From positions 1 to 64,000 of the forward strand of contig ADNK01000014.1 in the NCBI GenBank assembly GCA_000320545.1: a DNA stretch of 64,000 nucleotides, given 5' to 3'. The first letter of the stretch is position 1; each line of letters starts with the position of its first letter. The translations under genes were made by a program, and so were the position numbers. The stretch comes from Bigelowiella natans CCMP2755 (taxonomy: Eukaryota; Protista; Cercozoa). The notes below the pieces were generated by a model that did not search any database, had not been told where the DNA came from, and worked only from the letters and a program-made list of their open reading frames with translations. Shown piece after piece: positions 9,380-40,188 of this stretch.

Positions 9380-10179
9380 TTCTGTACATTCATCGATAGT
9401 AATAGTAACTCGAAGTAATCATCGGTGACTGCTTTGTTGATGTTGGTAGGTACACAAAGAGGCCGTTACTACGATGGCAGCATCGCTGCGAGCGCCACCC
9501 CCCCACCCATATTCACTTCACGAAGATGCAAAACGGTAATGCTGTTTGATCGTATCCCTTTTGTTTGTTTGTTTGTTTGCTCGGTCATCGCTTCGGAATG
9601 GCAGTTATGCTGAATCGCTGTCTGAGTCTATACTTCGCGCAAACACGCACATGCACGCGCACACACGTGTACAGATTTATTTTACACATAGCACCAAGTC
9701 TACGTTACTACATGCCTCTCCTTTCGTGCTGCCGTTTTGATTTTTTAAAGATAACGAGATGATGATTCTTCTTCGCTCTGTCCCTGAGCATGGGCTCTTG
9801 GCCTTCAGATACCATGACGGTTCTCACGTCTACCACAAACACCCTTCGAAATAACCTTAACATTCACGCTGCATTCATTTGACATAATGTCCTCCACTGC
9901 CCCGTGAGTGTGCGTGTGATGTGTGATGGATGGTCAAAATTCGCTCCGCAGCTTCTTGCTCTGCCGTCTTCTGTTTGTAGCCTTTCGTTTGCTTTCCCCT
10001 CCCTCATTTCATTCCCCTGACACTTGAATACTCGACAAAAAAATGATTTTCTAGGAGGAGGAGGGGGGGGGCTGTATTCTCAGGGATCACCGCAACTAAT
10101 ACGCTTGCAATGTAACGATGATGATTATTGCGATGATGGTGATGATGGTGGAGAATATCGATACTATTATACACACACG

Positions 10180-10214
<35 letters not shown>

Positions 10215-10289
10215 GATCATAAATGAGAGATCCCACTGGCTACATTATTAAAATATCTGGCTTATATTCTTACATATCTGGCTCATATT

Positions 10290-10327
<38 letters not shown>

Positions 10328-10389
10328 ACACATATTGTGACATCTAAAGCTAAGACGACGACCGTGGCCGTGTCACATAAGGGGAACAC

Positions 10390-10428
<39 letters not shown>

Positions 10429-10511
10429 TCTTCATATTAACATCATCATTCTCTGTTACATAAATCTTCGCCTTTCTCATCGCTCAGAGTCGCTCACCTT
10501 GGGCATCTCAC

Positions 10512-10548
<37 letters not shown>

Positions 10549-11645
10549 AAAACACGATACCCATGAATAAAGGCGCTCCCAATGAGGGAAACGGCGATAA
10601 ATGCTACTTCGGCTACTCCACCGTCGAGCCTCCACAAGAAGGGCGAGGTGGAAATGCTGATAATCATAACTACAAAGACCAGAGCGACGATGAGGATTCT
10701 CGAGCAGGATGGCGAAGGTCACAGCCGCAATCATCCGCAAGGATAACGATGCGTCTGCTAACAAACTGCTCAGGAACAATGAGATCTATGGTGAGTCGTC
10801 TCCACTCCACTCTCACACACTTACCGAAGAGGGGGAGACAGGGGGGGGGGGGGGGAAGGTAACAATTAGAGCCACTATCTACTTCTCTAATGGTCTATTT
10901 GATCGTGATAGGACATCCATTCAACGCTCGACGGCACCCCAGCAGGAAATAATACCAACGTTGCTTACAGAAGTAGAAGGGGGGGTCAGGGAGAAGGGGA
11001 GGCTGTTTATTATACACATCAGCAACAAAGGCATCGTAGTAGGGAAACTGCTGCTTTCAGGGAAGAAGAAGAAGAAGAAGAAGAAGAAGAAAGCATGAGA
11101 CCAACGCAGCGCACTGCCTCAAACGACGAGGACAACGGCGACGATGGTGCTGCAGAAGAATCAAACAGGAAGCTCGAAGAACGAAGGCTACTTGTAGCCA
11201 TTGAGAATACCCTTTTCCCTGCTGCTGACCAAGCTATGGACAATAGCACGCACAGCAGTGAAGGGGATTCATCGCTTTCACTTCGAGAGATCTTAGCGTC
11301 TTTTTTCCGTACACCACGGAGCACATTTGAGTTCGGTGAGAAGGTGTCACAACTAGTTGTCGATGATGAGGGAAAAAGATTCTCTTCTTCTTCTTCTTCT
11401 TCTTCTTCATCTTTATCCTCTTCTCGTGGCAAAAAGATTAAGAGGAGCAAGAAGAGGGGGAGAGAAGAGATGACCGAAGGTGTAGTATCTTCGACTTCAT
11501 CGTCTTCATCTCCGCCTGCATTCTCTCTTATTCTCAACTCTACTAACATTCTCTCGAAACTTTCCATATATCTCCATCGGCTTTCTGTAAACAACAACAA
11601 CAACAACAACAACAAAGAGAACACTTCCAAGAGGCATACCACTAG

Positions 11646-11680
<35 letters not shown>

Positions 11681-12033
11681 GGAAAAGGAAGAAGGAAGAA
11701 GAAGAGCAACACGACCCATTCGCTCTCCGCCGTCTTCCCTTTGCACCATTTCTCACCAAGATCGGGTTCGAAGCTCCTTCATCAACGCTATATGACGGAG
11801 AATCGGAAGGCTCCTCCTCCTTGAGAGATGGGTATAGTAATGATGATGACGACGACGACGATGACGATGGTGGTGATGGAGATAAGAGAGCTCGTGATGA
11901 GGATTCTGCAGCTCTAACAACAGTTGGCCCTCATCGATATATTTCTGAGACTTTCATTTCATCGGATGGCGCTGCTGCAGTGAAGAAAGCGCTCGGAATA
12001 AGCGAAGATGTAAATGGTAATACTTTCTCGTAA
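3200..12033 (+). CDS. TAF1C: TAF1C/Rrn6-like RNA polymerase I core-factor (SL1) subunit, WD40-like beta-propeller, ~20 exons
   Basis: Spliced motifs appear in the family order: VVDVAINPTISYQ|TAILSGDGRVRIWD (~5701-5930), CTFAAHPQ|ELLLMADKSIHRLDLRD (~8710-9012), ESYHAIAVN...FQFATATTRHLSLFDQR|YTKRPLLRWQH (~9202-9483). They match remembered TAF1C/Rrn6 hallmarks (DVxFNP; F..HP..L; L.D.R....P.L.W.H). The long low-complexity last exon ends at TAA 12033. Confidence 0.7.
4078..4124. repeat. Short tandem duplication (~23 bp x2) in a TAF1C intron
   Basis: ggtttcttattatttgttcatgt followed by ggtttcttattatttgttgatgt. Confidence 0.85.
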
Positions 12034-24596: not shown

Positions 24597-25485
24597 AGAA
24601 TGTTGGTGAAAACCCTCCTTCAATTATTTATAGAAATGTGATGATTTCTATTTTTACACACACACACACACACAACAACGCGTACAACATTTAGCCCGGG
24701 ATAGTCCCGAACAGCATGATATCTTTTGAGCCTCCGGCGTCCGACGAAGCACTTCAGCTTGCAAGGACGTTTTCCACTCTCGCCAAGCCGTACGATGAAT
24801 TTCGGGAACGACTCGCTAAAGTGAAGAAGATTATCTCGCGCAAGGACACAAAAGGCGCTTCCCCTCGAATCGTGTCTTCGCGTGATCACGAGAGGGAGGA
24901 GCTGCACATCAGCCCCAACCAAATATTTGTCGACGCGTTTTCCAGGAAACTCCTCATTACGCCGGTGCTTCCAAATTCTAAGGTATGAAAGTAATGAACA
25001 GTTTGATGATGATAAAAGTTATTAGTATTGGTGCTTTGTTGTAGCATCCCCCCCCCTCCCCCCCCCCCCTTCTCAATCTAGAAGTTAACTTATGCGCTAT
25101 TGAATGGCTATAAGGTGCTAAAGACGCTCATTTTGAGTTTCAACCGGCTGAACTCCATTGAGGAACTGGATGGGATAGCGCTACCTGCCCTCACCTTCAT
25201 GGACTTGGCATATAATGAGATCAAAACACTAAAAGGCTTCCCTTCCGCCCCAAATCTGAAGTCGCTTGATGTGTCACATAACCTACTCACGGGGCTTGCA
25301 GAGATTGACGCTATTGCTAAGCAGGTCGTCGTTCACAGCTCTCACCATTTATGTTCTTATTCAGCATCATCGATAGCCTTATAATTCCCCTTACTGTTTC
25401 GTATCATTGCCCGTGCATTGTTTGAGAAGAAGGTAGATCATGCTAGACTACACAGCAGCACTACCGCCTCGCAAATTAGACAACT

Positions 25486-25516
<31 letters not shown>

Positions 25517-25932
25517 GGTTCCCGACCTCCTCGAAGTAAATCTACGCGGAAACTACTTTTGCCGGTCCCTTCTGTACAAGACCAAAGTGCTATCATGCTT
25601 CCCAAAGCTGATCGGCTTCGATCTGCAGAAGGTTAGCCATCGAACTCGCAAGAGGATCAAGAAGCTCCCTTCTGTGCCCCTCTCGGAGAAGGTGCTGCTG
25701 CAAAGCTCCGATCTTTGCGGCGCGCAGTTCCTATCACGGATGGGATCGGCCAGCAAGATCCAGACGGAGATGAAGGAAATACTCGGGGAAAACGGCGACA
25801 GCAAATGGTAGGTCTTTCTCATCTCCTCCCTCCCCCCCTCCCACATCCGAAAAGAATGGCTTCTACTGCGATATTTGTGTGTAATTTGATGGTTTACTCG
25901 ACATAATGTTGATGATGATGTTTCCTGTCGTG

Positions 25933-25963
<31 letters not shown>

Positions 25964-26650
25964 CCCTCTCCAGGAGAGAAAGGGTTACGGAGCTGAAGCT
26001 CGGGAGTATGGGATATAAGCCATCGTCCAAGTTGCTGACAACTTTCCCGAACCTTAAGACGCTGCAGCTGCCCAACAACGACATTTCAGATGCCGACGAA
26101 TTGCAGCTCTCAAACTGCAAATGCCTCCAGGTAATATGCGTAATGACTGGCTACGATATAAATACTCCCACGTCATTTATCATACTCATTTTCCTCGTAA
26201 CGCCCACACTGGACAAGCACGCACGCACTTGTATGGGCTTGAAGTATGCTCATCACGGGCAGCCTCATCGTCATCAGCATCATCATCATCATCATCATCT
26301 CATCATTACCTCCCCCCCTCTCCCTTCACCCCCCCTTTGTTGTCTATGATCCAGGCCCTCGATCTTGACGGAAACCGTATATCTCGCATCCCTGGCTCCT
26401 TGCCTGACTCGCTAATGTCGCTATCACTCGCCAACAACTTAATCTCCCGCATGGAAAAACCCAGTGGTTGGACTGCATCGCTTACACGCCTCTGCCTTGA
26501 GAATAACCAGATCTCCTCTCTGGAAGGCTTCTCGAGCCTTACAGCGCTTATGGAGCTTTATCTTACGAGAAACAAGTATAGTAGAGTTGTCTTTAGTCTT
26601 TCGTACTATTTGGTCACCACACGAACACACACACACACACACATTATATG

Positions 26651-26705
<55 letters not shown>

Positions 26706-28042
26706 CGCGTGTGTGCTGTTCTTAAACGTATTATGTATGTGCGGCACTCAGGTTGAGCGAATCCAAGGAACTTATGCATCTCAAGCGCCTACCCCAGCTC
26801 CTCATCTTAGATTTATCCCAAAACGACGTACGCACGCACGCGCTGCTGCACACATGTTCGGCACCCCATCTTATGAATACAACGCCACTCACCCAATCGT
26901 ACAATGACGTGCTACCTCACTCTCTAATAGTACCTACCACCTTCCTTCAGGTTGTTAAAGCAGATAATTATCGGAATTTTGTCATCTTCCACTTGAAGAT
27001 CATCAAGGTGTCGTCAAGAGATGTTTGTCTACTACACTCTTCTTTTCCTACCGCTACTACTTTCACCACCATCACTACCACCACCACTACCTCGCAACCA
27101 TTATTCTTAACCTGCTGCTCTACTCTCCTCGATCGACTGCTTAGGTGCTTGATGGCATATCAATTCATACTAGCGAGCAGATAAAAGCGAGAGATATGTT
27201 CTCAGGGAAGGTACTTCTACACCACACTGTTTTTCTCTCTTCTACTATCTGCCTCTCTCTCTCGCTGACCCTCTTTTTGTGTCCTCATCGGCCAACATTA
27301 TCATCATGACCCACCAGCTTACGGAAGAGCAGCTCTTGGAGAGAACAGGCAAGAACACTAAATAAGCGACACACGATAACATCCTGACTGCAGCACTACC
27401 AATTACATCGCCCATCGAATGATAACCACGATGTATATAGTCCATCATAGTAACATCGTCACCTCATTGCTTCTTCATCTTTACCATCACTGTCATCATC
27501 ATCATCCTCATCATCATCATGATCCAATAATCATGATCTAATCATCATCATCTAATCATCGATGTCCATCCAGGAAAGGAGAGCACTCACACAATCCGCA
27601 GCCTAGACCTCACTGACGCAGGAGTAAAGAAGCTCGGTATCATTGATGCGAAGCGCTTCTCCAACCTCAGGTTGCCACTGCTACGCCTAAGCGTACAAGA
27701 AGAGGAGAGCGAGAGACGGGAATATACATATATGTAAGATATATTGATAGAGGATGAGAGAGAGGGAGAGAGATGTGAGTTTGGTAACATGATAGTCTTT
27801 CATCTTTCATATCTTCCCATTCCTCCGTAGAATCTTAAATCTCGACAAAAACCGCATTTCCGAGTTGATCCATTTTCACCCGCTTCCGAGCCTCAGGTGG
27901 GTGGTTTTGGTGCTACTATGCCCTGTGTGGGGATAAAGAAAAAGGGGGAGGGGGGGGGGTGATATTGAGAAGGAAGGTTATGGAAAGAGACGTAGTTGTA
28001 ATCGCAATCTCACTCCTCCACATCCCAGCAGGCAGCTGCTTG

Positions 28043-32405: not shown

Positions 32406-32957
32406 CTACCTTTCTGTAAAGACGGCGAATTCAAATCCTTGATCGGATATGTTCACTTTTCCGTTGCTGTTTTTCGAGGGCACGCCTCTTGCCCACAGCG
32501 TCTTGGAGACCACGATGGAGTTTCTCCGCACACTCGCAAGGTTCCGCAGGTCGGTGAGCTGCCCATCAACCTGCCTCGCATTATCAAGCATACACGCAAA
32601 ACTTGTCATCTTCCTTGCTGGTATTTACACACCTGGCTCCGCACTGTGACATTGGGTAACACGTCTCATTCCACCCTACCACCTCCCCGCAATAACGTTA
32701 TCATGTGCACACCACCTGGGAGAGGGCAATGTACTTCTGCACTAGAAAGGCTGCTGGCTCCTTCTCCACCATCGGCTTCACTTTGACGAATTCGTCTCTG
32801 CTCAGCTTGGGACCTACCCACACCGCATCACCACCTCGTCCATCCACACGTTTAACCACCTGTGTTAGCCATCAACAGCATGAATCATGGTATAGTAGTA
32901 GTAGTAGTCATAGTAGTGCAAGATAACTCACAAATCATAAGGGTGAGAGTCTAGCGG

Positions 32958-32988
<31 letters not shown>

Positions 32989-33090
32989 ACACACGCGCGC
33001 GCGAATACTACAAATGGCCACCTCTATAACAGCTACTAATGCGATATTCAGATCATCTAATAATGGCTTCCTTCCTCGCTCATTGTGCAC

Positions 33091-33127
<37 letters not shown>

Positions 33128-34055
33128 CTGAGAATAGACAACGACTCATGCTGCAGCAGCAGCCGCTTCTCCATCACCAATGCATGCTGGGAATCTGGGT
33201 CATCAAACACCGCCCGGAGTAGTTCCGAGCGTTTCGGCTCTTTGAGTGAGAAGGAGAGGGTAGGAATCGTCTTGAGAATAGGCTCTTCGTTTAAGTAGAA
33301 TCGAGTCAGTGTGTCCATATAGCAGCAGAACTGCTTGTCCCCGAGGAAATCAAACCCTGGGCCGTTTACAATCTTGACCAAGCCGTTAAAGTATGCGTCG
33401 AGGATGCCGGGAAACCTGCGTCACCGTCACCATCGCCATCCATAATCACCATCTCGATAATTAGCAGCAGCAGCAGCGCCGCTATCCAATGAGAACTTAC
33501 TAACGTTCTCCGTCGTCATCGTCATCGCCATCATCATCATCATCATCTTATATGATATACTACTACCACTACTACCACTACTACCACTACTGCTACTACT
33601 GCTGCTACTACTACTACTACTACCACTACCCTTGTCTTAGCATATCCTTCAGATCATCCTTCCTTGTAGACCGTAGATACCTCCTAATCTTCTCCAGCCT
33701 ATGCTTTTTCCGGCTGTTAGTGTAGGCTTCAATGAGCCTTTGAAGTTGCGCAGCGTTCCTTTCTTCGCTCTCCACCTTCCTACCCAATTTCTTCGCCTGT
33801 TTCCCTTGCTTCAGCTTCTCCGCATAGGCCTTTCGCAGACATCGAGCTCTGGTTTCGTGGCTTTCTTGCCAGTACTTGGCCTCCTCCAGGATACCTGTAG
33901 AAGGAGGGGCGCGAGGCGAGGGAGATGAAAAGAGGGGAAAGGAGGAGGAGGAGGAGGATGATATGAAGCAGGAAAAGAGCATGATTGATGGTGGTGTTAC
34001 ACAAGTAGATACGATGATAATGATTGAGGATGATGATGATGACGATGATATGATT

Positions 34056-34089
<34 letters not shown>

Positions 34090-34513
34090 GGTTTTGCTAC
34101 GTACTCTTCATTCGCACGGTACTATTAGCCGGGTCAACATCGTAGATTTCGGCATCTATCACGATTAAGCCAACGCGAGTTCTTTTCCCCTTCTTGGAAG
34201 GGCTCTCGCTCCCATTTCGTTTACTTTGCCTTCTTCGCGGGGATTTTCCTGACTTTTGCGAGAGTCTCCCTGATTTCCTCTGTTTTTTCTTCTTCACCAA
34301 GTAGACACCATTCTTCTCAATCTATAGTAGCAATATGGACGAGGAGGAGGTAGAGGAGGAGGAGGAGGAGGAGGAGGGAGATAATACCATGTTTATGGGT
34401 AAACGAAGCAGAATCTGTTTTATTGAAGAAGAACATAGTGCTTGCAGGTATGAAGTGTCAAAACAACATAACGCAAAGGGGACCAGTCGGCATCTGTCGT
34501 TGCTATCGTCGTC

Positions 34514-34546
<33 letters not shown>

Positions 34547-35732
34547 AGATCACCTTGAGCGATATAGCGTCCTTTGAACGAAACCCTGGGATAGGAATCT
34601 CTACCTTTGTTAAACCGCGAGACTCGAATAAACGTATCACCTGAGAAGAAGTGGATAAGGCAGGAGGAGGAGGGAGGAGTGAGGGAAGGAGCAGGAGGTA
34701 AATGAGGGTGTGTGGGAGAGGACAAGAGAGGACAAATGACGTCGATGCCAGTAGTAGAAGGGTTGGTGATTGGGTACTACTCTCTCTGAGGCAGATTGAC
34801 ATGACACTGCGTATCTCTCTATATCGGATTACTACTACTATTATCATTATTATCACTATTATAACCCTCTTCTCCTCTTTGTCAGGCCACATCCAACGCG
34901 GGTAGCACAAGAGCACCACCGCTTCTCCATGTCTTAACACACCACGCACGGCCATTCATTGAGTCGTCGTCGTCATCAACACGTGGCCAACGATGAGGAA
35001 AAGAGGCGCCAACAAAAGAGAAGCAAAAGAGGGGATGACGAAGGGCATGTAGAAACAGACACACATGATGGTCAGAATAGTTATAACGGTAAGAACAAAA
35101 AACGGGGCGATTCATGACATAACGACTCACTAATCTTATATGAGAATGTGTAAAAATGATCAACCAAGTACATGCAGAGGGTGCCCCGCCTCACCGGACT
35201 GCACCCCTGTAGTCGTCAACGAGCGCGTCATAAAACGCTCCCGGCATCTCTTGAGTATCGCTAAAGAGTGAATACCATCGAATAAGTATCCGATGATCGA
35301 TATCGTTGCCAAGATTAATAATAATATCATGCGAGTGAGGGGGGGGAGGAGGAAGGAGAAGGAGCTTAAATGTGCACATAATGCGTCGGCAAAATGGCTT
35401 GTTTGCCACACTACTGTAAGCAGTCTCCATCACTCACCCTTCCTTCTCGTATTGTGTAGGGAAGAACAGGGATCGATATGTAGAACTGGTGTATTTCTAC
35501 TACTACTACTACTACTACTATTACTACTATTACTATTACTGCTACACCTTGTGATGTGCGGAGAGTATTCAGGGAACGACGACAGGATGCTCTTCCTTGC
35601 AATCTCCAAGTCACCCTATTTTGAGAGGGAGAGAGGGAAAAGAGCCACGGAGAAGAAACCCAAGAACGAAGAGGTCGGTCCATCATCATTGTCATCATTA
35701 TTATCATCATCATCATCGACAGTGTGCGTGCG

Positions 35733-35776
<44 letters not shown>

Positions 35777-37890
35777 GACAGGAGGATAGATGGATGATGG
35801 TGGTAGAGGGCTGTTTGTGTGTCGTCATCACACCATGCCTCCCACGTATCCGAGATTGTCCTCGCACACATAGAACTCTCCGCTCGGTGCACGTATAATA
35901 TCAGGGCCATACCTACGATCACGGCGACGGCATTCAATTTTATCTCAGTGCGGTGAAAGAAAAGCTACTAGCAACAACCATTTCCTTTGGCAATTTTCGA
36001 GTTCCTTGCTGCTGTTCAGAAATCCACTATTTGCCCCTCCTCTCTCTCTCTCTCCCCTCCCCACCCCCCGGTGGTTCTCGAAAAGGGTTGTAATTAGTGA
36101 ATATTAATGTAGTACCAGAATCCCCACGTGTCCTGCATCGCTGTTCTCCCAGAGGATTTAAGTAGCTTCTAAACACGACGACGACGACGACGAATAACAT
36201 CGACTCAGTAGCAATAATAATGGAATTTTCAAAGACGTGCACATTCACACATCCACGCACAGGCACGCAAGTCCTCCATCATCTTCATCATCGTCATCGT
36301 CATCATCGATTATCTAGCTGTGTACATGTGTGGTGAGGGTGGAGGACTGCCTCCTCTATTCGCTGCTCAATCTACTACCTTTTCTTCGTTTCGAGCGATG
36401 ATATTCTTGAGGATTGCCTTTGGGAATATCTGATAATGATGATGAGATGTTGTACAAGAAGAAGAAGGAGAACGATAGTTTTTTAGGGGGGGGTGGGCAC
36501 AGCACAGCTTAATTATGTAGAGAGGATCATGATGATGACGAGGTGGAGGAGGTGGAGAAGGAGGAAAGTAAATATCCATAACAACGTTAGAAGGGACAGA
36601 GATGAGGGAAAGAGGAAGAGAGAAAGAGAGAAATCATGGAGAATATCATCAGTTTTCTTCTCTCCTTTTATGTCGTCGCCAACGTTATGACACCACTACT
36701 TACTACCACCTTTTTATTCCGATATGTTGGCTTCTTTGACTTAGCTGAGTAGTGATCGCGGAGGAATGCCTACCCCGCACCAATCACCATCACCAATGCT
36801 GCCTTCTTCATTGTTGTTGTTGTTCTTCTTCATCATGATCATCATGATCATCATCATCATAAGACTGTGACTATCATTGTCCTCCTAATAGCAGCAATGC
36901 TGACATAGGACTCCTCGCTTCTTCCAAAACAGCAAGCAACGAGCACCTGAATCGTTCTGGCCCTCTGGTGCACTCCTTTGTGCAGTCTCTCTGCCTCCTT
37001 CCTCGTGAGCATGCGCGGGATGTGGTAAAGCCGGTTATCGCTTGCGAAATCCTGCAAGGATGATGATGATGATGATGTTGAATGATGAAGTCTATTTATA
37101 CTACTGCTAAAGCTACTGCTACCTTGAGGCTTTTGTCCTTAAACTCTTCGATTCGCCTCGGAGACTTGCTCTCGATCTCAGACACAATCTTCTCTATCGC
37201 TCCATAGGCCTAGAACAATGCCGACAATAGTTGCGTTGACGAGAACGATGAAAGGAGAGGGAGGAAGACAGGAAAAAAAAGCAGGTGCATGAGAAAGGAG
37301 AGGGAGGAGAGGGAATAGAGAGAGAATGGAGGAAAGTTTAGCGGAGTGACTCAACTGGACGGACTGTCCCTTTGGCATCGTACATTTCGTCGAAAAATGC
37401 GGAGCCATCCTTCCAGCCCTTGATGATGCTCTGCACACTGGATTCCATACGGGTGGTAACATCGAAAGAAGCGATCATTGGGTCTTCTGAAGCGTCGGTT
37501 TCTAAGGCCTGCTCGATCCATTTGCTGTCCTGAATGAAGGGGGAAGGGTAATTTTACTTAAATTGTGTTTGAAGAACTGCCTTCTTGATGAAATCATAGA
37601 TCGACAACTACTTCTTCATCTTCTTCGTTCACGTAGTAGTCGGCAAACACATCCATCGGGCTGTTTGTCTCTTCCTTGGACATGTGCTTTTGATCCTTGT
37701 CGCCGCCGTTGTTCCCCCCATCATCCGAAGGCGAGCTTGGAGAGAACGGTGAATGTCCTGAGGGATACGGACTGCATGTGCGATAAACAAAACAGACTGC
37801 ATCAATGAGGACAAATTCATTCGTTTTAGAGATCTACAATAAAATCTATTGAGATAATTGGACTGCTCGTATCTTCATGGTGTAGAATAC

Positions 37891-37930
<40 letters not shown>

Positions 37931-38474
37931 ACACACACACACTCACACACTCACTCACATGTGTATACTATACATATTTTTGTATACGATACGTATTCTT
38001 CAAAGTCGTACTATTCTCACCCGTCGGATGTCGGTGTAGAGACAGCTGCAGGACGAGGAATCTTCTGATTTGTATTATTGATGGAACCGACGACGTGCTC
38101 GTCAAGCCCCAGCCGCTCAATTCCTTTCAAGATTTTTCGCATTTGAAGTGGGGGAATACGTAGCGCCTTGCCATCATCCTCCCGCAAGAACCTATATTCG
38201 GTTTCAGGCAAAATCATCACTAAGATTCGAGCACAGGCACCCAGCGATGTGATGACATTATTTGTATGCGTTGGTGCCTGACTGGAGATCTTTTGGCTTC
38301 TCCGCTCCGAATTCCTTAAGCGCTGCAGCATAGCGTTCAAGGCCGGCGTCGATGGAGGTCAGCACCTGCGCAATCCCCCCTTCTGACATCGGTCTGAAGG
38401 TTCAAGGCGTGCTTCCCGATGGTGAGTGGTTCGTCGTCAGATACAACAGATACAATAGAGATATCTCGAGACAT
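32406..38474 (-). CDS. SAM domain fused to a circularly permuted type-2 ATP-grasp amidoligase (CP_ATPgrasp_2/DUF404-like), intron-rich
   Basis: The N-terminus MSRDISIVS...VLTSIDAGLERYAAALKEFGAEKPKDLQ|FLREDDGKALRIPPLQMRKILKGIERL is SAM-like. It is followed by YHIPRMLTRKEAERLHKGVHQRARTIQ|AFLRDHY, YGPDIIRAPSGEFYVCEDNLGY, FPGILDAYFNGLVKIVNGPGFDFLGDKQFCCYMDTLTRFYLNEEPILKTIPT, VVKRVDGRGGDAVWVGP...FLVQKYIALSQ and TDLRNL...ARGV...GKVNISDQG. These are collinear with bacterial CP-ATP-grasp motifs. Confidence 0.85.
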
Positions 38475-38678: not shown

Positions 38679-40188
38679 ATGGCTTCGGAAAACTTTGGGC
38701 TGGATTGTCTCGTGGCTGGCATCCATGCAGGCCTTGGCGCTGTGGCGGCAGCGAGGATTCCCCATTCCTCTGAAAAGGGCGGAATGTTCCTTCGGTAAGG
38801 AAGTCTTGTCTGTCTGTCACCCTGTCTTGCTCTCCTCGCAATATTTACATTTATCTAGGCTGGTCAGTTTGCACGCTATTGTCCTGATCTTAGCAAACTT
38901 ACTCCTGCCTCGCGGGCCTGTCCAGGGTCCATGGCAATTTATTCTCATAATGAAAATGTTTGTCAACGTAAGGAGAATTAAGTGTCGACCTTATCCGAAA
39001 TCTCACTCGTTGCTGTCTTCAAAATTTGTCCCAGATATTTGGCATACTGCTAACCTTTGGGTTTCTACACAAAGTCACACAAGCTGAATTCACCGCCAGG
39101 AATCTTCGGCCTCTCCCGTGGGAATTTCACTACGTCTTCATCTATTTGACCAGCTTCTGTGTCATAATCGAATTTATTGCGAAGATGGGTGAGTGCTCCT
39201 AACTTTTTGCAAATATTGATACCCTTATTGATTATTGGTCGTGTATATTGCTTTTATGTGTTATTGGTTGGGTTGTGGGTTGATTTTCTCTCTTCCTCTT
39301 TCTATCTCTCTTTCTCTATGTGGCCTGTGTGGATTCGTTCTGTTCCATATTACGAACATGAAAGTCGTTCTTGGCACAAATGAGCAGCAATTTGAGGCTT
39401 TTTCGTTCGGAGCTATAGCAGGTGGGCTGTTGCTAATTTACCCATACATACTCCGTCAACTTTCGTCCTTGCATAAATACGTCCAAGAACAAGCATTGTT
39501 CTTGAAGCGGAGCAATACTGAACGCTCAACACGGTCGGTCAGCAATCGAGCCCGTAAGACAGCCGATGTAAAAACTATGGGATCAACAATGACATTACCA
39601 CATTTTGACTCGAAACGGGTACTATCACCAGTCAAAGATCTTGAGAAAAACTTGCCGTCAACGCCTCCTGCTGAGAAGGAACGATCCATGCACGAGATTC
39701 CTGCTGTCCAATGCCCTCTCAAACATCCGTCCGATGAACATCCTAGTATAAATCTCAACAATGTTGCTGGAATGAATAGCATGGATTCTGTAAGGATGAC
39801 AAGTTTTGCATCTCAGTCACCCAACATTGGAAGCCCTTCTGGCAAATCAAAACCGCGTGCGCAGAGATCAAAGTCGCGGCAGTTTGTTAAGAGGATGAGA
39901 ATCGAGGAGGAAGAATACAGAGATATTGGTAGAAAGATCATGCTTGTTATGATTTGGATAAGTGTTCTGACCAGCATCGGGCTCGTTGTAAACATATCGG
40001 AAACAGTTTTGGCTGCAACAGATCGGAGATCGCATGAGCAGTGGTTACAAGACTCGCACCCGAATACTGGCATGCCCTCACGTCCTGTTGGACTCACGGT
40101 CTTCTATTTGTTGTTCGAAACATTTTTTATTTGGTATGGGGGTGGTCCCTGGCGAAGCTCTCCGCGGCGTTCGGCGAATTATCATTGA
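38679..40188 (+). CDS. Orphan seven-transmembrane (GPCR-like topology) protein with long third intracellular loop
   Basis: Spliced exons give seven hydrophobic segments: CLVAGIHAGLGAVAAA; LVSLHAIVLILANLLL; WQFILIMKMFVN|IFGILLTFGFL; FHYVFIYLTSFCVIIEFIAKM|VVLG; FSFGAIAGGLLLIYPYIL; then a long S/P/K-rich loop; IMLVMIWISVLTSIGLVVNI; VGLTVFYLLFETFFIWYG. Confidence 0.55.

What the first reader, a model, noticed from the sequence alone, without database searches (positions are those of the whole stretch)
32406..38474. Bacterial-type circularly permuted ATP-grasp peptide ligase domesticated in a eukaryote and fused to a SAM domain
Seen: more than 15 spliceosomal exons rebuild the collinear CP-ATP-grasp type-2 motifs (IPR..E..R+..G..QRA, D++R...G.F.V.EDN, PG+..AY..G.V.+.N.PG....DK, Y+.EEP+L, VVK.VDG.GG, DLR, VN.S..G) behind an N-terminal SAM-like domain. 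Known: this family is mainly prokaryotic and sits in operons with alpha-E proteins, transglutaminase-like enzymes and Anbu proteasome-like peptidases, where it was proposed to ligate peptides or tags. Inference: an old horizontal acquisition, now intron-rich. A eukaryotic interaction module could target an undescribed ATP-dependent peptide-tagging or small-peptide synthesis activity.
Basis: partly seen in the sequence, partly recalled or inferred. Interest (0 to 1): 0.87.

Follow-up and report, generated by a model that had tools for sequence, protein, structure and literature searches.

The report
Predator-bacteria-type ATP-grasp ligase gene in alga
This is a real, expressed, intron-rich gene of the alga Bigelowiella natans for an amide-bond-forming enzyme whose nearest bacterial relatives are secreted proteins of predatory bacteria. 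The enzyme's substrate is unknown, and the claimed SAM domain at its front end is not supported by sequence tests.

Summary
A minus-strand gene (CDS 38389..32409, stop 32406-32408) encodes a circularly permuted ATP-grasp ligase (Pfam CP_ATPgrasp_2, 124 bits). It is the public JGI model Bigna1/125546 of Bigelowiella natans.

- **Expression:** spliced transcript contigs from two studies run from the first exon to the last, so the N-terminal exons are co-transcribed. They also correct the model: exon 4 is 9 nt longer, and the 27-nt exon 15 is absent (19 exons, about 787 aa).
- **Enzyme:** 42 of 43 family-wide conserved residues are kept. The best structural match is the bacterial family member 3N6X, not glutathione synthetase.
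- **Origin:** the gene is not a private acquisition. It belongs to a "long-form" clade found in Vannella, dinoflagellates, other chlorarachniophytes and a giant-virus-like contig. That clade nests inside Bdellovibrionota/Myxococcota proteins, most of which carry signal peptides.
- **Partners:** this long form has no Alpha-E/transglutaminase/Anbu context, in bacteria or in this genome.
- **SAM claim:** weak. There is no Pfam hit, a targeted HMM gives p about 0.07, and AlphaFold confidence is low. Only the ESM Atlas model resembles SAM, and no relative has this N-terminus.

The substrate is unknown. This is a new variant of a known family, of moderate interest.

The parts
38283..38389 (-). Exon 1: start codon at 38389; first half of the SAM-like helical N-terminus.
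   Evidence: joint 38191/38283 in three runs; transcript contig begins at about 38416.
38021..38191 (-). Exon 2: second half of the SAM-like region and the start of a low-complexity linker.
   Evidence: joints 38191/38283 and 37771/38021.
37612..37771 (-). Exon 3: acidic, low-complexity linker (AlphaFold pLDDT 30-40).
37356..37529 (-). Exon 4: start of the conserved ligase region (FDEMYDAKGTVRP). The transcript-supported end is 37356; the JGI model stops at 37365 and so loses VRP, including the family-conserved Arg.
   Evidence: joint 37209/37356, 146 nt skipped; donor GTTGAG; consensus G..R.AY.
37123..37209 (-). Exon 5.
36947..37051 (-). Exon 6: motif IPRMLT..E..R..KGV.QRA.
36710..36769 (-). 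Exon 7.
36379..36429 (-). Exon 8.
36116..36168 (-). Exon 9.
35834..35912 (-). Exon 10: YGPDIIR...FYVCEDN, the invariant E337-D338-N339 triad (inferred metal/phosphate site).
35548..35615 (-). Exon 11.
35195..35260 (-). Exon 12.
34866..34932 (-). Exon 13.
34554..34640 (-). Exon 14. In the transcripts it is joined directly to the exon at 34105-34321.
   Evidence: X1 record 2: 114 nt upstream of 34322 = 87 + 27 nt of exon 13.
34388..34414 (-). 27-nt micro-exon present only in the JGI model (ILLRLPINM). It is not in the transcript contigs and is probably a prediction artefact.
   Evidence: depth of bin 34280-34479 equals 43 covered bases in X1, X2 and X5, and the records are 27 nt shorter than the model; the sister protein P0160 has a 9-residue gap there.
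34105..34321 (-). Exon with the Lys/Arg-rich loop (model residues about 462-495) and the VGLIVIDAE strand.
33630..33894 (-). Exon encoding the long helical insertion typical of the long form (helices 521-552, 558-584, 587-609).
33178..33415 (-). Exon with PG..AY..G.V.IVNGPG....DK and YL.EEPIL. It is the best single Pfam-matching exon.
32716..32859 (-). Exon with VVKRVDGRGG (invariant K694 and glycine loop) and ..VQKY (Q732).
32406..32570 (-). Last exon: DLR (D746, R748), W..RG, GKVNIS (N779); stop codon TAG at 32406-32408.

Best explanation
The locus is an intact, transcribed nuclear gene of Bigelowiella natans (19 exons in the mRNA). It encodes a cytosolic or nuclear 'long-form' circularly permuted ATP-grasp amidoligase of the Pfam family CP_ATPgrasp_2.

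Chemistry (inferred from the fold and the conserved residues). The enzyme binds Mg-ATP, phosphorylates a substrate carboxylate to an acyl-phosphate, and lets an amine attack it to form an amide bond. This is what its structural relatives do: glutathione synthetase, glutathionylspermidine synthetase and the E-64 ligase Cp1B.

The long form as a sub-family. It carries an extra helical insertion, and the eukaryotic members also carry a basic loop. It works without the Alpha-E/transglutaminase/Anbu partners of the short form.

Distribution. The long form is found almost only in three places:
- predatory Bdellovibrionota and a Myxococcota genome, where most members carry a signal peptide;
- scattered protists;
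- a giant-virus-like genome.

Origin. The eukaryote and virus sequences form one clade nested among the bacterial ones. The most likely history is one bacterium-to-eukaryote transfer, followed by spread or patchy retention among protists and later intron gain.

Open points. The N-terminal 170 residues, including the 'SAM-like' 65, are a lineage-specific appendage of uncertain fold. The substrate is unknown. I lean slightly towards a peptide or protein carboxylate, because the terminal extensions vary by lineage and the eukaryotic basic loop is conserved. That part is inference only.
For: - **Family membership.** Pfam CP_ATPgrasp_2 scores 123.8 bits against a cut-off of 32 on the public model, and single exons hit it too. 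The only PDB sequence match is 3N6X, E 7e-23.
- **Structure.** In the AlphaFold model the catalytic part has pLDDT about 90 and pTM 0.73. The best Foldseek hit is 3N6X (TM 0.78, E 3.5e-20), ahead of glutathione synthetases at TM about 0.57.
- **Catalytic residues.** 42 of 43 columns that are at least 90% conserved across short, long and eukaryotic members are kept, including EDN337-339, K639, K694, Q732, D746, R748 and N779.
- **Gene model and expression.** 20 model exons, all GT-AG, translate exactly. Spliced contigs of 2488 and 2578 nt from two studies run from exon 1 to the last exon.
- **Copy number.** One place in the 91-Mb genome.
- **Eukaryotic relatives.** Vannella (two paralogues), Lotharella, Gymnodinium smaydae, and eukaryote-like contigs with split enolase or RhoGEF/G-patch genes.
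- **Viral relative.** A 911-kb contig whose Rpb1 is nearest to an 'uncultured virus' protein.
- **Phylogeny.** The eukaryote+virus clade has SH-aLRT 99-100 and is nested in the bacterial long form.
- **Bacterial relatives.** 35 of the 41 relatives among species genomes carry Bdellovibrionota-type names, and one is a Myxococcota genome.
- **Signal peptides.** Signal-peptide-like N-termini in about 24 of 32 bacterial loci, counted by eye.
- **No partners.** No conserved neighbours. No Alpha-E in 5 of those genomes or in this genome.
Against: - No biochemical datum exists for any member of CP_ATPgrasp_2, so both the substrate and even the ligase activity are inferred.
- The trees are 'quick' IQ-TREE runs with SH-aLRT support only. 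Most eukaryote-clade rows are unnamed transcript or metagenome proteins, and relationships inside the clade do not follow species phylogeny.
- Presence in three eukaryotic supergroups could also mean an ancient gene with many losses.
- All solved structural neighbours are small-molecule ligases, which argues against the protein-substrate leaning.
- The analyses used the public model P0159, which differs from the mRNA by +3 and -9 residues.
Confidence: 0.8

Rival explanations
1. A genuine SAM interaction domain was fused to the ligase and targets a peptide-tagging activity to partner proteins or oligomers.
For: - The N-terminal exons are in the same spliced transcript.
- Residues 1-64 of the ESM Atlas model align to a SAM_1/SAM_2 cluster (TM 0.65 and 0.76), and SAM proteins make up half of the ten nearest structure rows.
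- The targeted HMM alignment is in register, positions 20-61 on both sides.
- AlphaFold places helices at 5-26, 33-39, 50-62 and 67-77.
Against: - No SAM-clan Pfam hit at E<=0.1 on the model.
- The locus is absent from 39 and 33 SAM_1/SAM_2 matches in the own genome at E<=10.
- An HMM built from 19 B. natans SAM domains gives 1.8 bits, and 217 of 3000 shuffles do as well.
- AlphaFold pLDDT is 37-60 there.
- HhH/NusA-like helices match the Atlas model about as well.
- No other protein shares this N-terminus, and the sister P0160 has a Cys-rich N-terminus instead.
Confidence: 0.3
2. It is a small-molecule synthetase. Like glutathione, glutathionylspermidine or E-64 synthetases, it would make a low-molecular-weight amide (a thiol, polyamine or dipeptide-like metabolite) and would not modify proteins.
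For: - Every solved structural neighbour after 3N6X is a small-molecule amide ligase: GSS, homoglutathione synthetase, GspS, trypanothione synthetase, YgiC/YjfC and Cp1B.
- Cp1B is the E-64 amide ligase (PMC12568646).
- The gene stands alone, without protease or 'eraser' partners.
Against: - Lineage-variable N- and C-terminal extensions and a conserved basic loop in the eukaryotic members are unusual for a housekeeping metabolic enzyme.
- The bacterial relatives carry signal peptides, which does not fit cytosolic metabolite synthesis.
- The distribution is patchy.
Confidence: 0.4
3. It is an ancient, vertically inherited eukaryotic gene that was present in the last eukaryotic common ancestor and lost many times, not a horizontally transferred one. 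On this reading the bacterial long forms were acquired from eukaryotes.
For: - Members occur in Rhizaria, Amoebozoa and Alveolata.
- Two Vannella paralogues suggest old duplications.
- Predatory or host-associated bacteria sometimes take up eukaryotic genes.
Against: - With short-form outgroups, the eukaryote clade is nested several nodes deep inside diverse Bdellovibrionota lineages.
- No named animal, fungal or plant protein appears among the hits.
- Only about 20 eukaryote-clade clusters were found in 5.8 billion proteins.
- The parent family is overwhelmingly bacterial.
Confidence: 0.12
4. It is bacterial contamination, or a dead relic that is not a functional host gene.
For: None beyond the bacterial affinity of the family.
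Against: - 19 GT-AG introns and eukaryotic neighbours on the same contig.
- Full-length spliced transcripts in several studies.
- An open frame with 42 of 43 conserved residues kept.
Confidence: 0.01

Closest known systems
Short-form CP_ATPgrasp_2 / CP_ATPgrasp_1 proteins of bacteria (about 470 aa; structure 3N6X, Mfla_0391 of Methylobacillus flagellatus)
   Same: Same Pfam family, same order of motifs and same invariant residues. It is the best sequence and structure match.
   Different: - The short form is described with Alpha-E and transglutaminase-like genes (PMC3495828, citing Iyer et al. 2009) and with Anbu (PMC5666114, title and abstract as listed; full text not read).
- The long form here adds about 100-150 residues (helical insertion, basic loop) and has no such partners.
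- The two forms are separated by the longest internal branch of the tree.
Long-form CP_ATPgrasp_2 proteins of Bdellovibrionota and a Myxococcota genome (e.g. P0165 from a Bdellovibrionales genome; loci L036-L070)
   Same: Full-length similarity of 30-34% over about 600 residues (E to 5e-98). They share long-form regions, stand alone as genes, and are the nearest bacterial branch.
   Different: The bacterial proteins mostly begin with signal peptides, have no introns and lack the Lys-rich loop. The algal protein has a 170-residue N-terminal extension and no signal peptide.
Eukaryotic glutathione synthetase, glutathionylspermidine/trypanothione synthetases and the fungal E-64 ligase Cp1B
   Same: Same circularly permuted ATP-grasp architecture and, presumably, the same acyl-phosphate amide-ligation chemistry.
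   Different: Only 7-11% identity and TM 0.35-0.62. There is no Pfam GSH_synth_ATP, GSH_synthase or GSP_synth hit on the protein. It is not a member of those families.
Tubulin tyrosine ligase-like (TTLL) protein-tagging ATP-grasp enzymes
   Same: They are the functional analogy behind the peptide-tagging idea: ATP-grasp enzymes that add amino acids to protein carboxylates (PMC3495828).
   Different: TTLL is not circularly permuted, and no sequence or structure match was seen here. The analogy is conceptual only.

Membership tests
CP_ATPgrasp_2 (PF14403) / CP_ATPgrasp_1 (PF04174) | Score above Pfam's gathering threshold. | tested here: met
   123.8 bits (cut-off 32) and 101.3 bits (cut-off 23.1) on P0159. 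The exon at 33178-33415 alone scores 38.8 bits in the six-frame scan.
CP_ATPgrasp_2 (PF14403) / CP_ATPgrasp_1 (PF04174) | Family-wide conserved (presumed catalytic and nucleotide-binding) residues, in the permuted order. | tested here: met
   42 of 43 columns that are at least 90% conserved in 54 short, long and eukaryotic members are kept; the one change is A263 to T.
CP_ATPgrasp_2 (PF14403) / CP_ATPgrasp_1 (PF04174) | Fold like the solved family member 3N6X. | tested here: met
   Foldseek rank 1, E 3.5e-20, TM by target 0.78. The model's catalytic part has pLDDT about 90.
Alpha-E / transglutaminase / Anbu 'peptide-tagging' gene system | Co-occurrence or linkage with an Alpha-E (PF04168) gene. 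| tested here: not met
   No Alpha-E match in the own genome (exon fragmentation could hide it) or in 5 bacterial genomes with the long form. No conserved neighbour in 32 bacterial loci.
Alpha-E / transglutaminase / Anbu 'peptide-tagging' gene system | A linked transglutaminase-like peptidase. | tested here: not met
   Five Transglut_core matches in the genome, all on other contigs. None lies next to the bacterial or eukaryotic homologues examined.
SAM domain (SAM_1 PF00536, SAM_2 PF07647) | A significant match to a SAM profile. | tested here: not met
   No hit at E<=0.1 on P0159. The locus is not among the genome's SAM matches at E<=10. The targeted HMM gives 1.8 bits, empirical p about 0.07.
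SAM domain (SAM_1 PF00536, SAM_2 PF07647) | A compact five-helix bundle fold. | tested here: inconclusive
   The ESM Atlas model matches a SAM cluster for residues 1-64 at TM 0.65 and 0.76, but also HhH/NusA rows. AlphaFold gives four helices at pLDDT 37-60.
Eukaryotic glutathione synthetase (PF03917/PF03199) | A Pfam match and closest structural similarity. | tested here: not met
   No Pfam hit. Structural matches are at 8-10% identity and TM 0.44-0.62, well behind 3N6X.
Horizontally acquired bacterial gene | The eukaryotic sequences are nested within a bacterial clade in a rooted tree. | tested here: met
   The eukaryote+virus clade (SH-aLRT 99-100) lies inside Bdellovibrionota/Myxococcota long forms with short forms as outgroup. 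These are quick searches, without bootstrap or AU test.

The most novel reading that the evidence does not exclude
The long-form enzyme began as a secreted effector of predatory bacteria that modifies prey molecules. It was captured once by a protist or a giant virus and passed among protists. It now acts as an ATP-dependent ligase that adds an amino acid or small amine to protein or peptide carboxylates. Lineage-specific end modules would aim it at different targets: the SAM-like one in Bigelowiella, Cys-rich ones in its sister and in dinoflagellates, and a C-terminal module in dinoflagellates. That would make it a protein-tagging system distinct from the TTLL enzymes.
Probability: 0.15. Interest if true: 0.75.

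Novelty: new variant of a known kind. Interest (0 to 1): 0.45.

Why it matters
No member of the CP_ATPgrasp_2 family has a known substrate. This analysis splits off a long-form branch that does not use the Alpha-E/transglutaminase/Anbu partners on which the only published functional prediction rests.

That branch has an unusual range: secreted proteins of predatory bacteria, scattered protists and a giant-virus-like genome. It offers two tractable entry points for finding the family's chemistry, a cultivable alga with a sequenced genome and Bdellovibrio.

It is also a clean case of a bacterial gene that gained about 18 introns and lineage-specific appendages after transfer. In addition, the work corrects the public gene model in two places.

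Tried and rejected
1. **Pfam on single exons for SAM**: nothing.
2. **SAM_1 and SAM_2 six-frame scans of the own genome at E<=10**: many SAM loci were found, but not this one.
3. **Own SAM HMM from 19 B. natans SAM domains**: not significant.
4. **Search with residues 1-200 of the model**: only the protein itself. The tool sees only proteins of 436-1388 aa that share 5-residue words.
5. **IMG/VR scan with the clade alignment**: no viral contig, so the giant-virus link rests on one metagenome contig and its two close relatives in the tree.
6. **ESM Atlas search with the insertion, residues 430-612**: no informative match.
7. **Neighbourhood clustering of 32 bacterial loci**: only unrelated housekeeping genes (trypsin-like peptidase in 5 loci, PgpA, histidine kinase, AlaRS, RecA).
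8. **Literature**: no paper on eukaryotic or long-form members. The key paper, Iyer et al. 2009 (PMC3268129), is not held, so whether it already mentions eukaryotic members is unchecked.
9. **Contamination, pseudogene and glutathione synthetase readings:** rejected (see rivals).
10. **Joined spliced model:** Exons were searched by reference, and whole-protein analyses used the public model P0159 as returned by the search tool. The corrected 787-aa product was neither assembled nor searched.

Full report
**What is there**

Two single exons already match Pfam CP_ATPgrasp_2 and CP_ATPgrasp_1. Six-frame scans of the whole 91-Mb genome with both models find this one place only.

A search of 1.84 billion representative proteins with one 77-residue exon gave 233 hits. 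The best were 45-95% identical. A follow-up search returned a 793-aa protein named jgi/Bigna1/125546 (P0159). Its sequence maps onto the window as 20 exons with exact translation, and every intron is GT-AG. So the organism is Bigelowiella natans, as earlier notes of this scan also said, and the gene is already in the public annotation.

**Expression and the true gene structure**

Runs labelled with one organism hold about a third of the stretch's words, roughly in line with the exonic share of about 40%. When these runs are laid on the locus, single contigs of 2488 nt (study P2) and 2578 nt (study P3) run spliced from about 38416 to the last exon. The N-terminal exons and the ligase exons are therefore one transcript. 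Thirteen junctions are listed explicitly and agree with the model, with one exception.

- **Exon 4.** The intron after exon 4 is 37210-37355, so exon 4 ends at 37356, not 37365. This adds Val-Arg-Pro and restores the family-conserved Arg of the G..R.AY motif.
- **Exon 15.** The records are 27 nt shorter than the model between exons 4 and 16. The depth of bin 34280-34479 equals exactly 43 covered bases in three runs. X1's record 2 has 114 nt upstream of 34322, which is exon 14 plus 27 nt of exon 13. From this I infer that the 27-nt model exon 34388-34414 is not in the mRNA. The sister protein has a 9-residue gap at that spot.

The mRNA thus has 19 exons and should encode about 787 residues. Whole-protein analyses used the public model, which differs from it by +3 and -9 residues.

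**The enzyme**

- **Family.** P0159 scores 123.8 bits on CP_ATPgrasp_2. Its only PDB sequence relative is 3N6X, a bacterial family member deposited as 'putative glutathionylspermidine synthase' (E 7e-23).
- **Model.** An AlphaFold model built with an 18-sequence alignment has pLDDT about 90 over residues 175-793, apart from two loops, and pTM 0.73.
- **Fold search.** Foldseek ranks 3N6X first (TM 0.78, E 3.5e-20). Eukaryotic glutathione synthetases, glutathionylspermidine and trypanothione synthetases, YgiC/YjfC and the fungal E-64 ligase Cp1B follow at 7-11% identity.
- **Conserved residues.** Of 43 alignment columns at least 90% conserved across 54 short-form, long-form and eukaryotic members, the algal protein keeps 42. 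These include E337-D338-N339, K639, K694, Q732, D746, R748, R767 and N779.

I infer an active enzyme with the usual ATP-grasp chemistry: ATP, then an acyl-phosphate on a carboxylate, then attack by an amine to give an amide.

**A distinct long-form branch**

Trees of 187 and 50 sequences split the family into the familiar 470-aa short form and a long form of 520-900 aa. The long form has extra segments. In the algal model these are three long helices (521-609) and, in the eukaryotic members, a Lys/Arg-rich loop.

Scanning one genome per prokaryotic species found 41 relatives. Thirty-five carry Bdellovibrionota-type names (Bdellovibrio, Bacteriovoracaceae, Bacteriovorax, Pseudobdellovibrionaceae, Oligoflexia). 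The best single hit is a Myxococcota genome (34% identity, 5e-98).

About 24 of 32 of these proteins begin with a typical signal peptide. Most of the rest are truncated ORF calls.

Their gene neighbourhoods share nothing. Five of the genomes have no Alpha-E gene, and the algal genome shows none either. Transglutaminase-core genes exist in the alga, but on other contigs.

It cannot be carried over to this gene.

**Where the algal gene came from**

The eukaryote-type sequences form one clade with SH-aLRT 99-100. Its members are:

- Bigelowiella and an unnamed sister, P0160;
- two Vannella paralogues;
- Gymnodinium smaydae and related dinoflagellate-like proteins;
- a protein on a 1.2-Mb contig with RhoGEF, G-patch and Ras genes;
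- one on contigs with intron-split enolase and DJ-1 genes.

Fragments from Lotharella globosa and a 95%-identical metatranscriptome piece also belong here by similarity.

One subclade (P0161, P0009, P0031) includes a protein on a 911-kb, intron-free, gene-dense contig. That contig carries Rpb1, XRN, Ras-like GTPase and kinase genes. The nearest named relative of its Rpb1 is from an 'uncultured virus' on a 1.6-Mb contig. I read this as a giant virus, although IMG/VR held no relative.

With short forms as outgroup, the eukaryote+virus clade sits several nodes inside the Bdellovibrionota/Myxococcota long forms. The simplest history is one transfer from such a bacterium, then spread or patchy retention among protists, with intron gain in Bigelowiella. 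The homologues on the eukaryote-like contigs are called as single ORFs.

Two cautions apply. These are quick tree searches without bootstraps, and most rows are unnamed. No named animal, fungal or plant protein appeared among the hits, so eukaryote-wide vertical orthologues were not found. Orthologues outside Bigelowiella clearly exist.

**The SAM claim**

Splicing exon 1 to exon 2 gives a 65-residue helical stretch whose pattern looks SAM-like. It fails the sequence tests:

- no SAM-clan family at E<=0.1 on the model;
- absent from the 39 and 33 SAM_1/SAM_2 matches of the genome even at E<=10;
- 1.8 bits against an HMM I built from 19 SAM domains of the same genome, equalled by 217 of 3000 shuffles.

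AlphaFold gives four helices at pLDDT 37-60, then about 100 disordered residues. The only positive result is the ESM Atlas's own model. Its residues 1-64 superpose on a SAM_1/SAM_2 cluster (TM 0.65 and 0.76) and on several SAM-containing proteins, but also on HhH/NusA rows.

No other protein shares this N-terminus, and the sister protein has a Cys-rich one instead. I put a true SAM fold at roughly one in two, and a targeting role at less than that.

**Function**

- **Shown:** family membership, intact signature residues, expression, and stand-alone status.
- **Inferred:** amide ligation through an acyl-phosphate.
- **Unknown:** the substrate.

All solved structural neighbours are small-molecule ligases. 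That supports a metabolite product.

Three features lean the other way, towards a peptide or protein substrate. The terminal modules vary by lineage, the eukaryotic members share a conserved basic loop, and the bacterial members are secreted. I hold the two options at about 45:40.

**Verdict**

The gene is annotated and belongs to a named Pfam family. It represents a long-form, partner-less branch that is not described in the literature I could search. That branch links predatory bacteria, protists and a giant-virus-like genome. Interest is moderate.

Noticed in passing
L037-L070 (bacterial loci), N-termini of the matched ORFs: About 24 of 32 long-form proteins of Bdellovibrionota start with a classical signal peptide (by eye). 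An ATP-dependent ligase exported by predatory bacteria is odd. It may act inside prey.
   Followed up: partly
L003 and L004 (911-kb JGI metagenome contig and a 41-kb Logan contig), gene at 10001-11701: A long-form homologue (P0161) lies in an intron-free, gene-dense region with Rpb1(-Rpb6), XRN, an Arf/Ras GTPase, kinases and a collagen/Peptidase_G2 protein. The nearest named relative of its Rpb1 is from an 'uncultured virus', so this is probably a giant virus.
   Followed up: partly
L005:7333-12851: A bacterial contig carries two divergently transcribed long-form paralogues (760 and 732 aa) next to a small AstE/AspA (M14-like) deacylase. This may be a ligase/hydrolase pair.
   Followed up: no
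L006:6592-11803: A bacterial long-form gene (P0166) lies about 1 kb from an 800-aa Amidoligase_2 protein and a BPL_N protein, so two unrelated amidoligases sit in one neighbourhood.
   Followed up: no
window 37356-37364 and 34388-34414: The public JGI model Bigna1/125546 appears wrong in two places compared with transcript contigs. It uses a donor 9 nt too early in exon 4, and it has a spurious 27-nt micro-exon.
   Followed up: yes
window 36277-36479: Contig depth peaks at 70-330x inside an intron, with many loose ends. The stretch is a GAC/GAT-type trinucleotide repeat, so the depth probably comes from unrelated transcripts that carry the same repeat.
   Followed up: no
P0015, P0016, P0163, P0021 (dinoflagellate-type homologues): These carry a large extra insertion of about 100 residues in the middle. 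Some also have a conserved C-terminal module of about 100 residues. P0021 and P0160 have Cys-rich N-terminal motifs. The end modules thus differ by lineage.
   Followed up: no
window 25100-27200 (+) and 39235-40188 (+): The neighbouring genes are a leucine-rich-repeat protein downstream and a multi-pass membrane-like protein that is transcribed divergently from about 0.2-0.8 kb upstream of the ligase start. There is no functional link to the ligase.
   Followed up: no
It lies outside the transcript contig, whose 5' end is at about 38416, so translation should start at 38389.
   Followed up: yes
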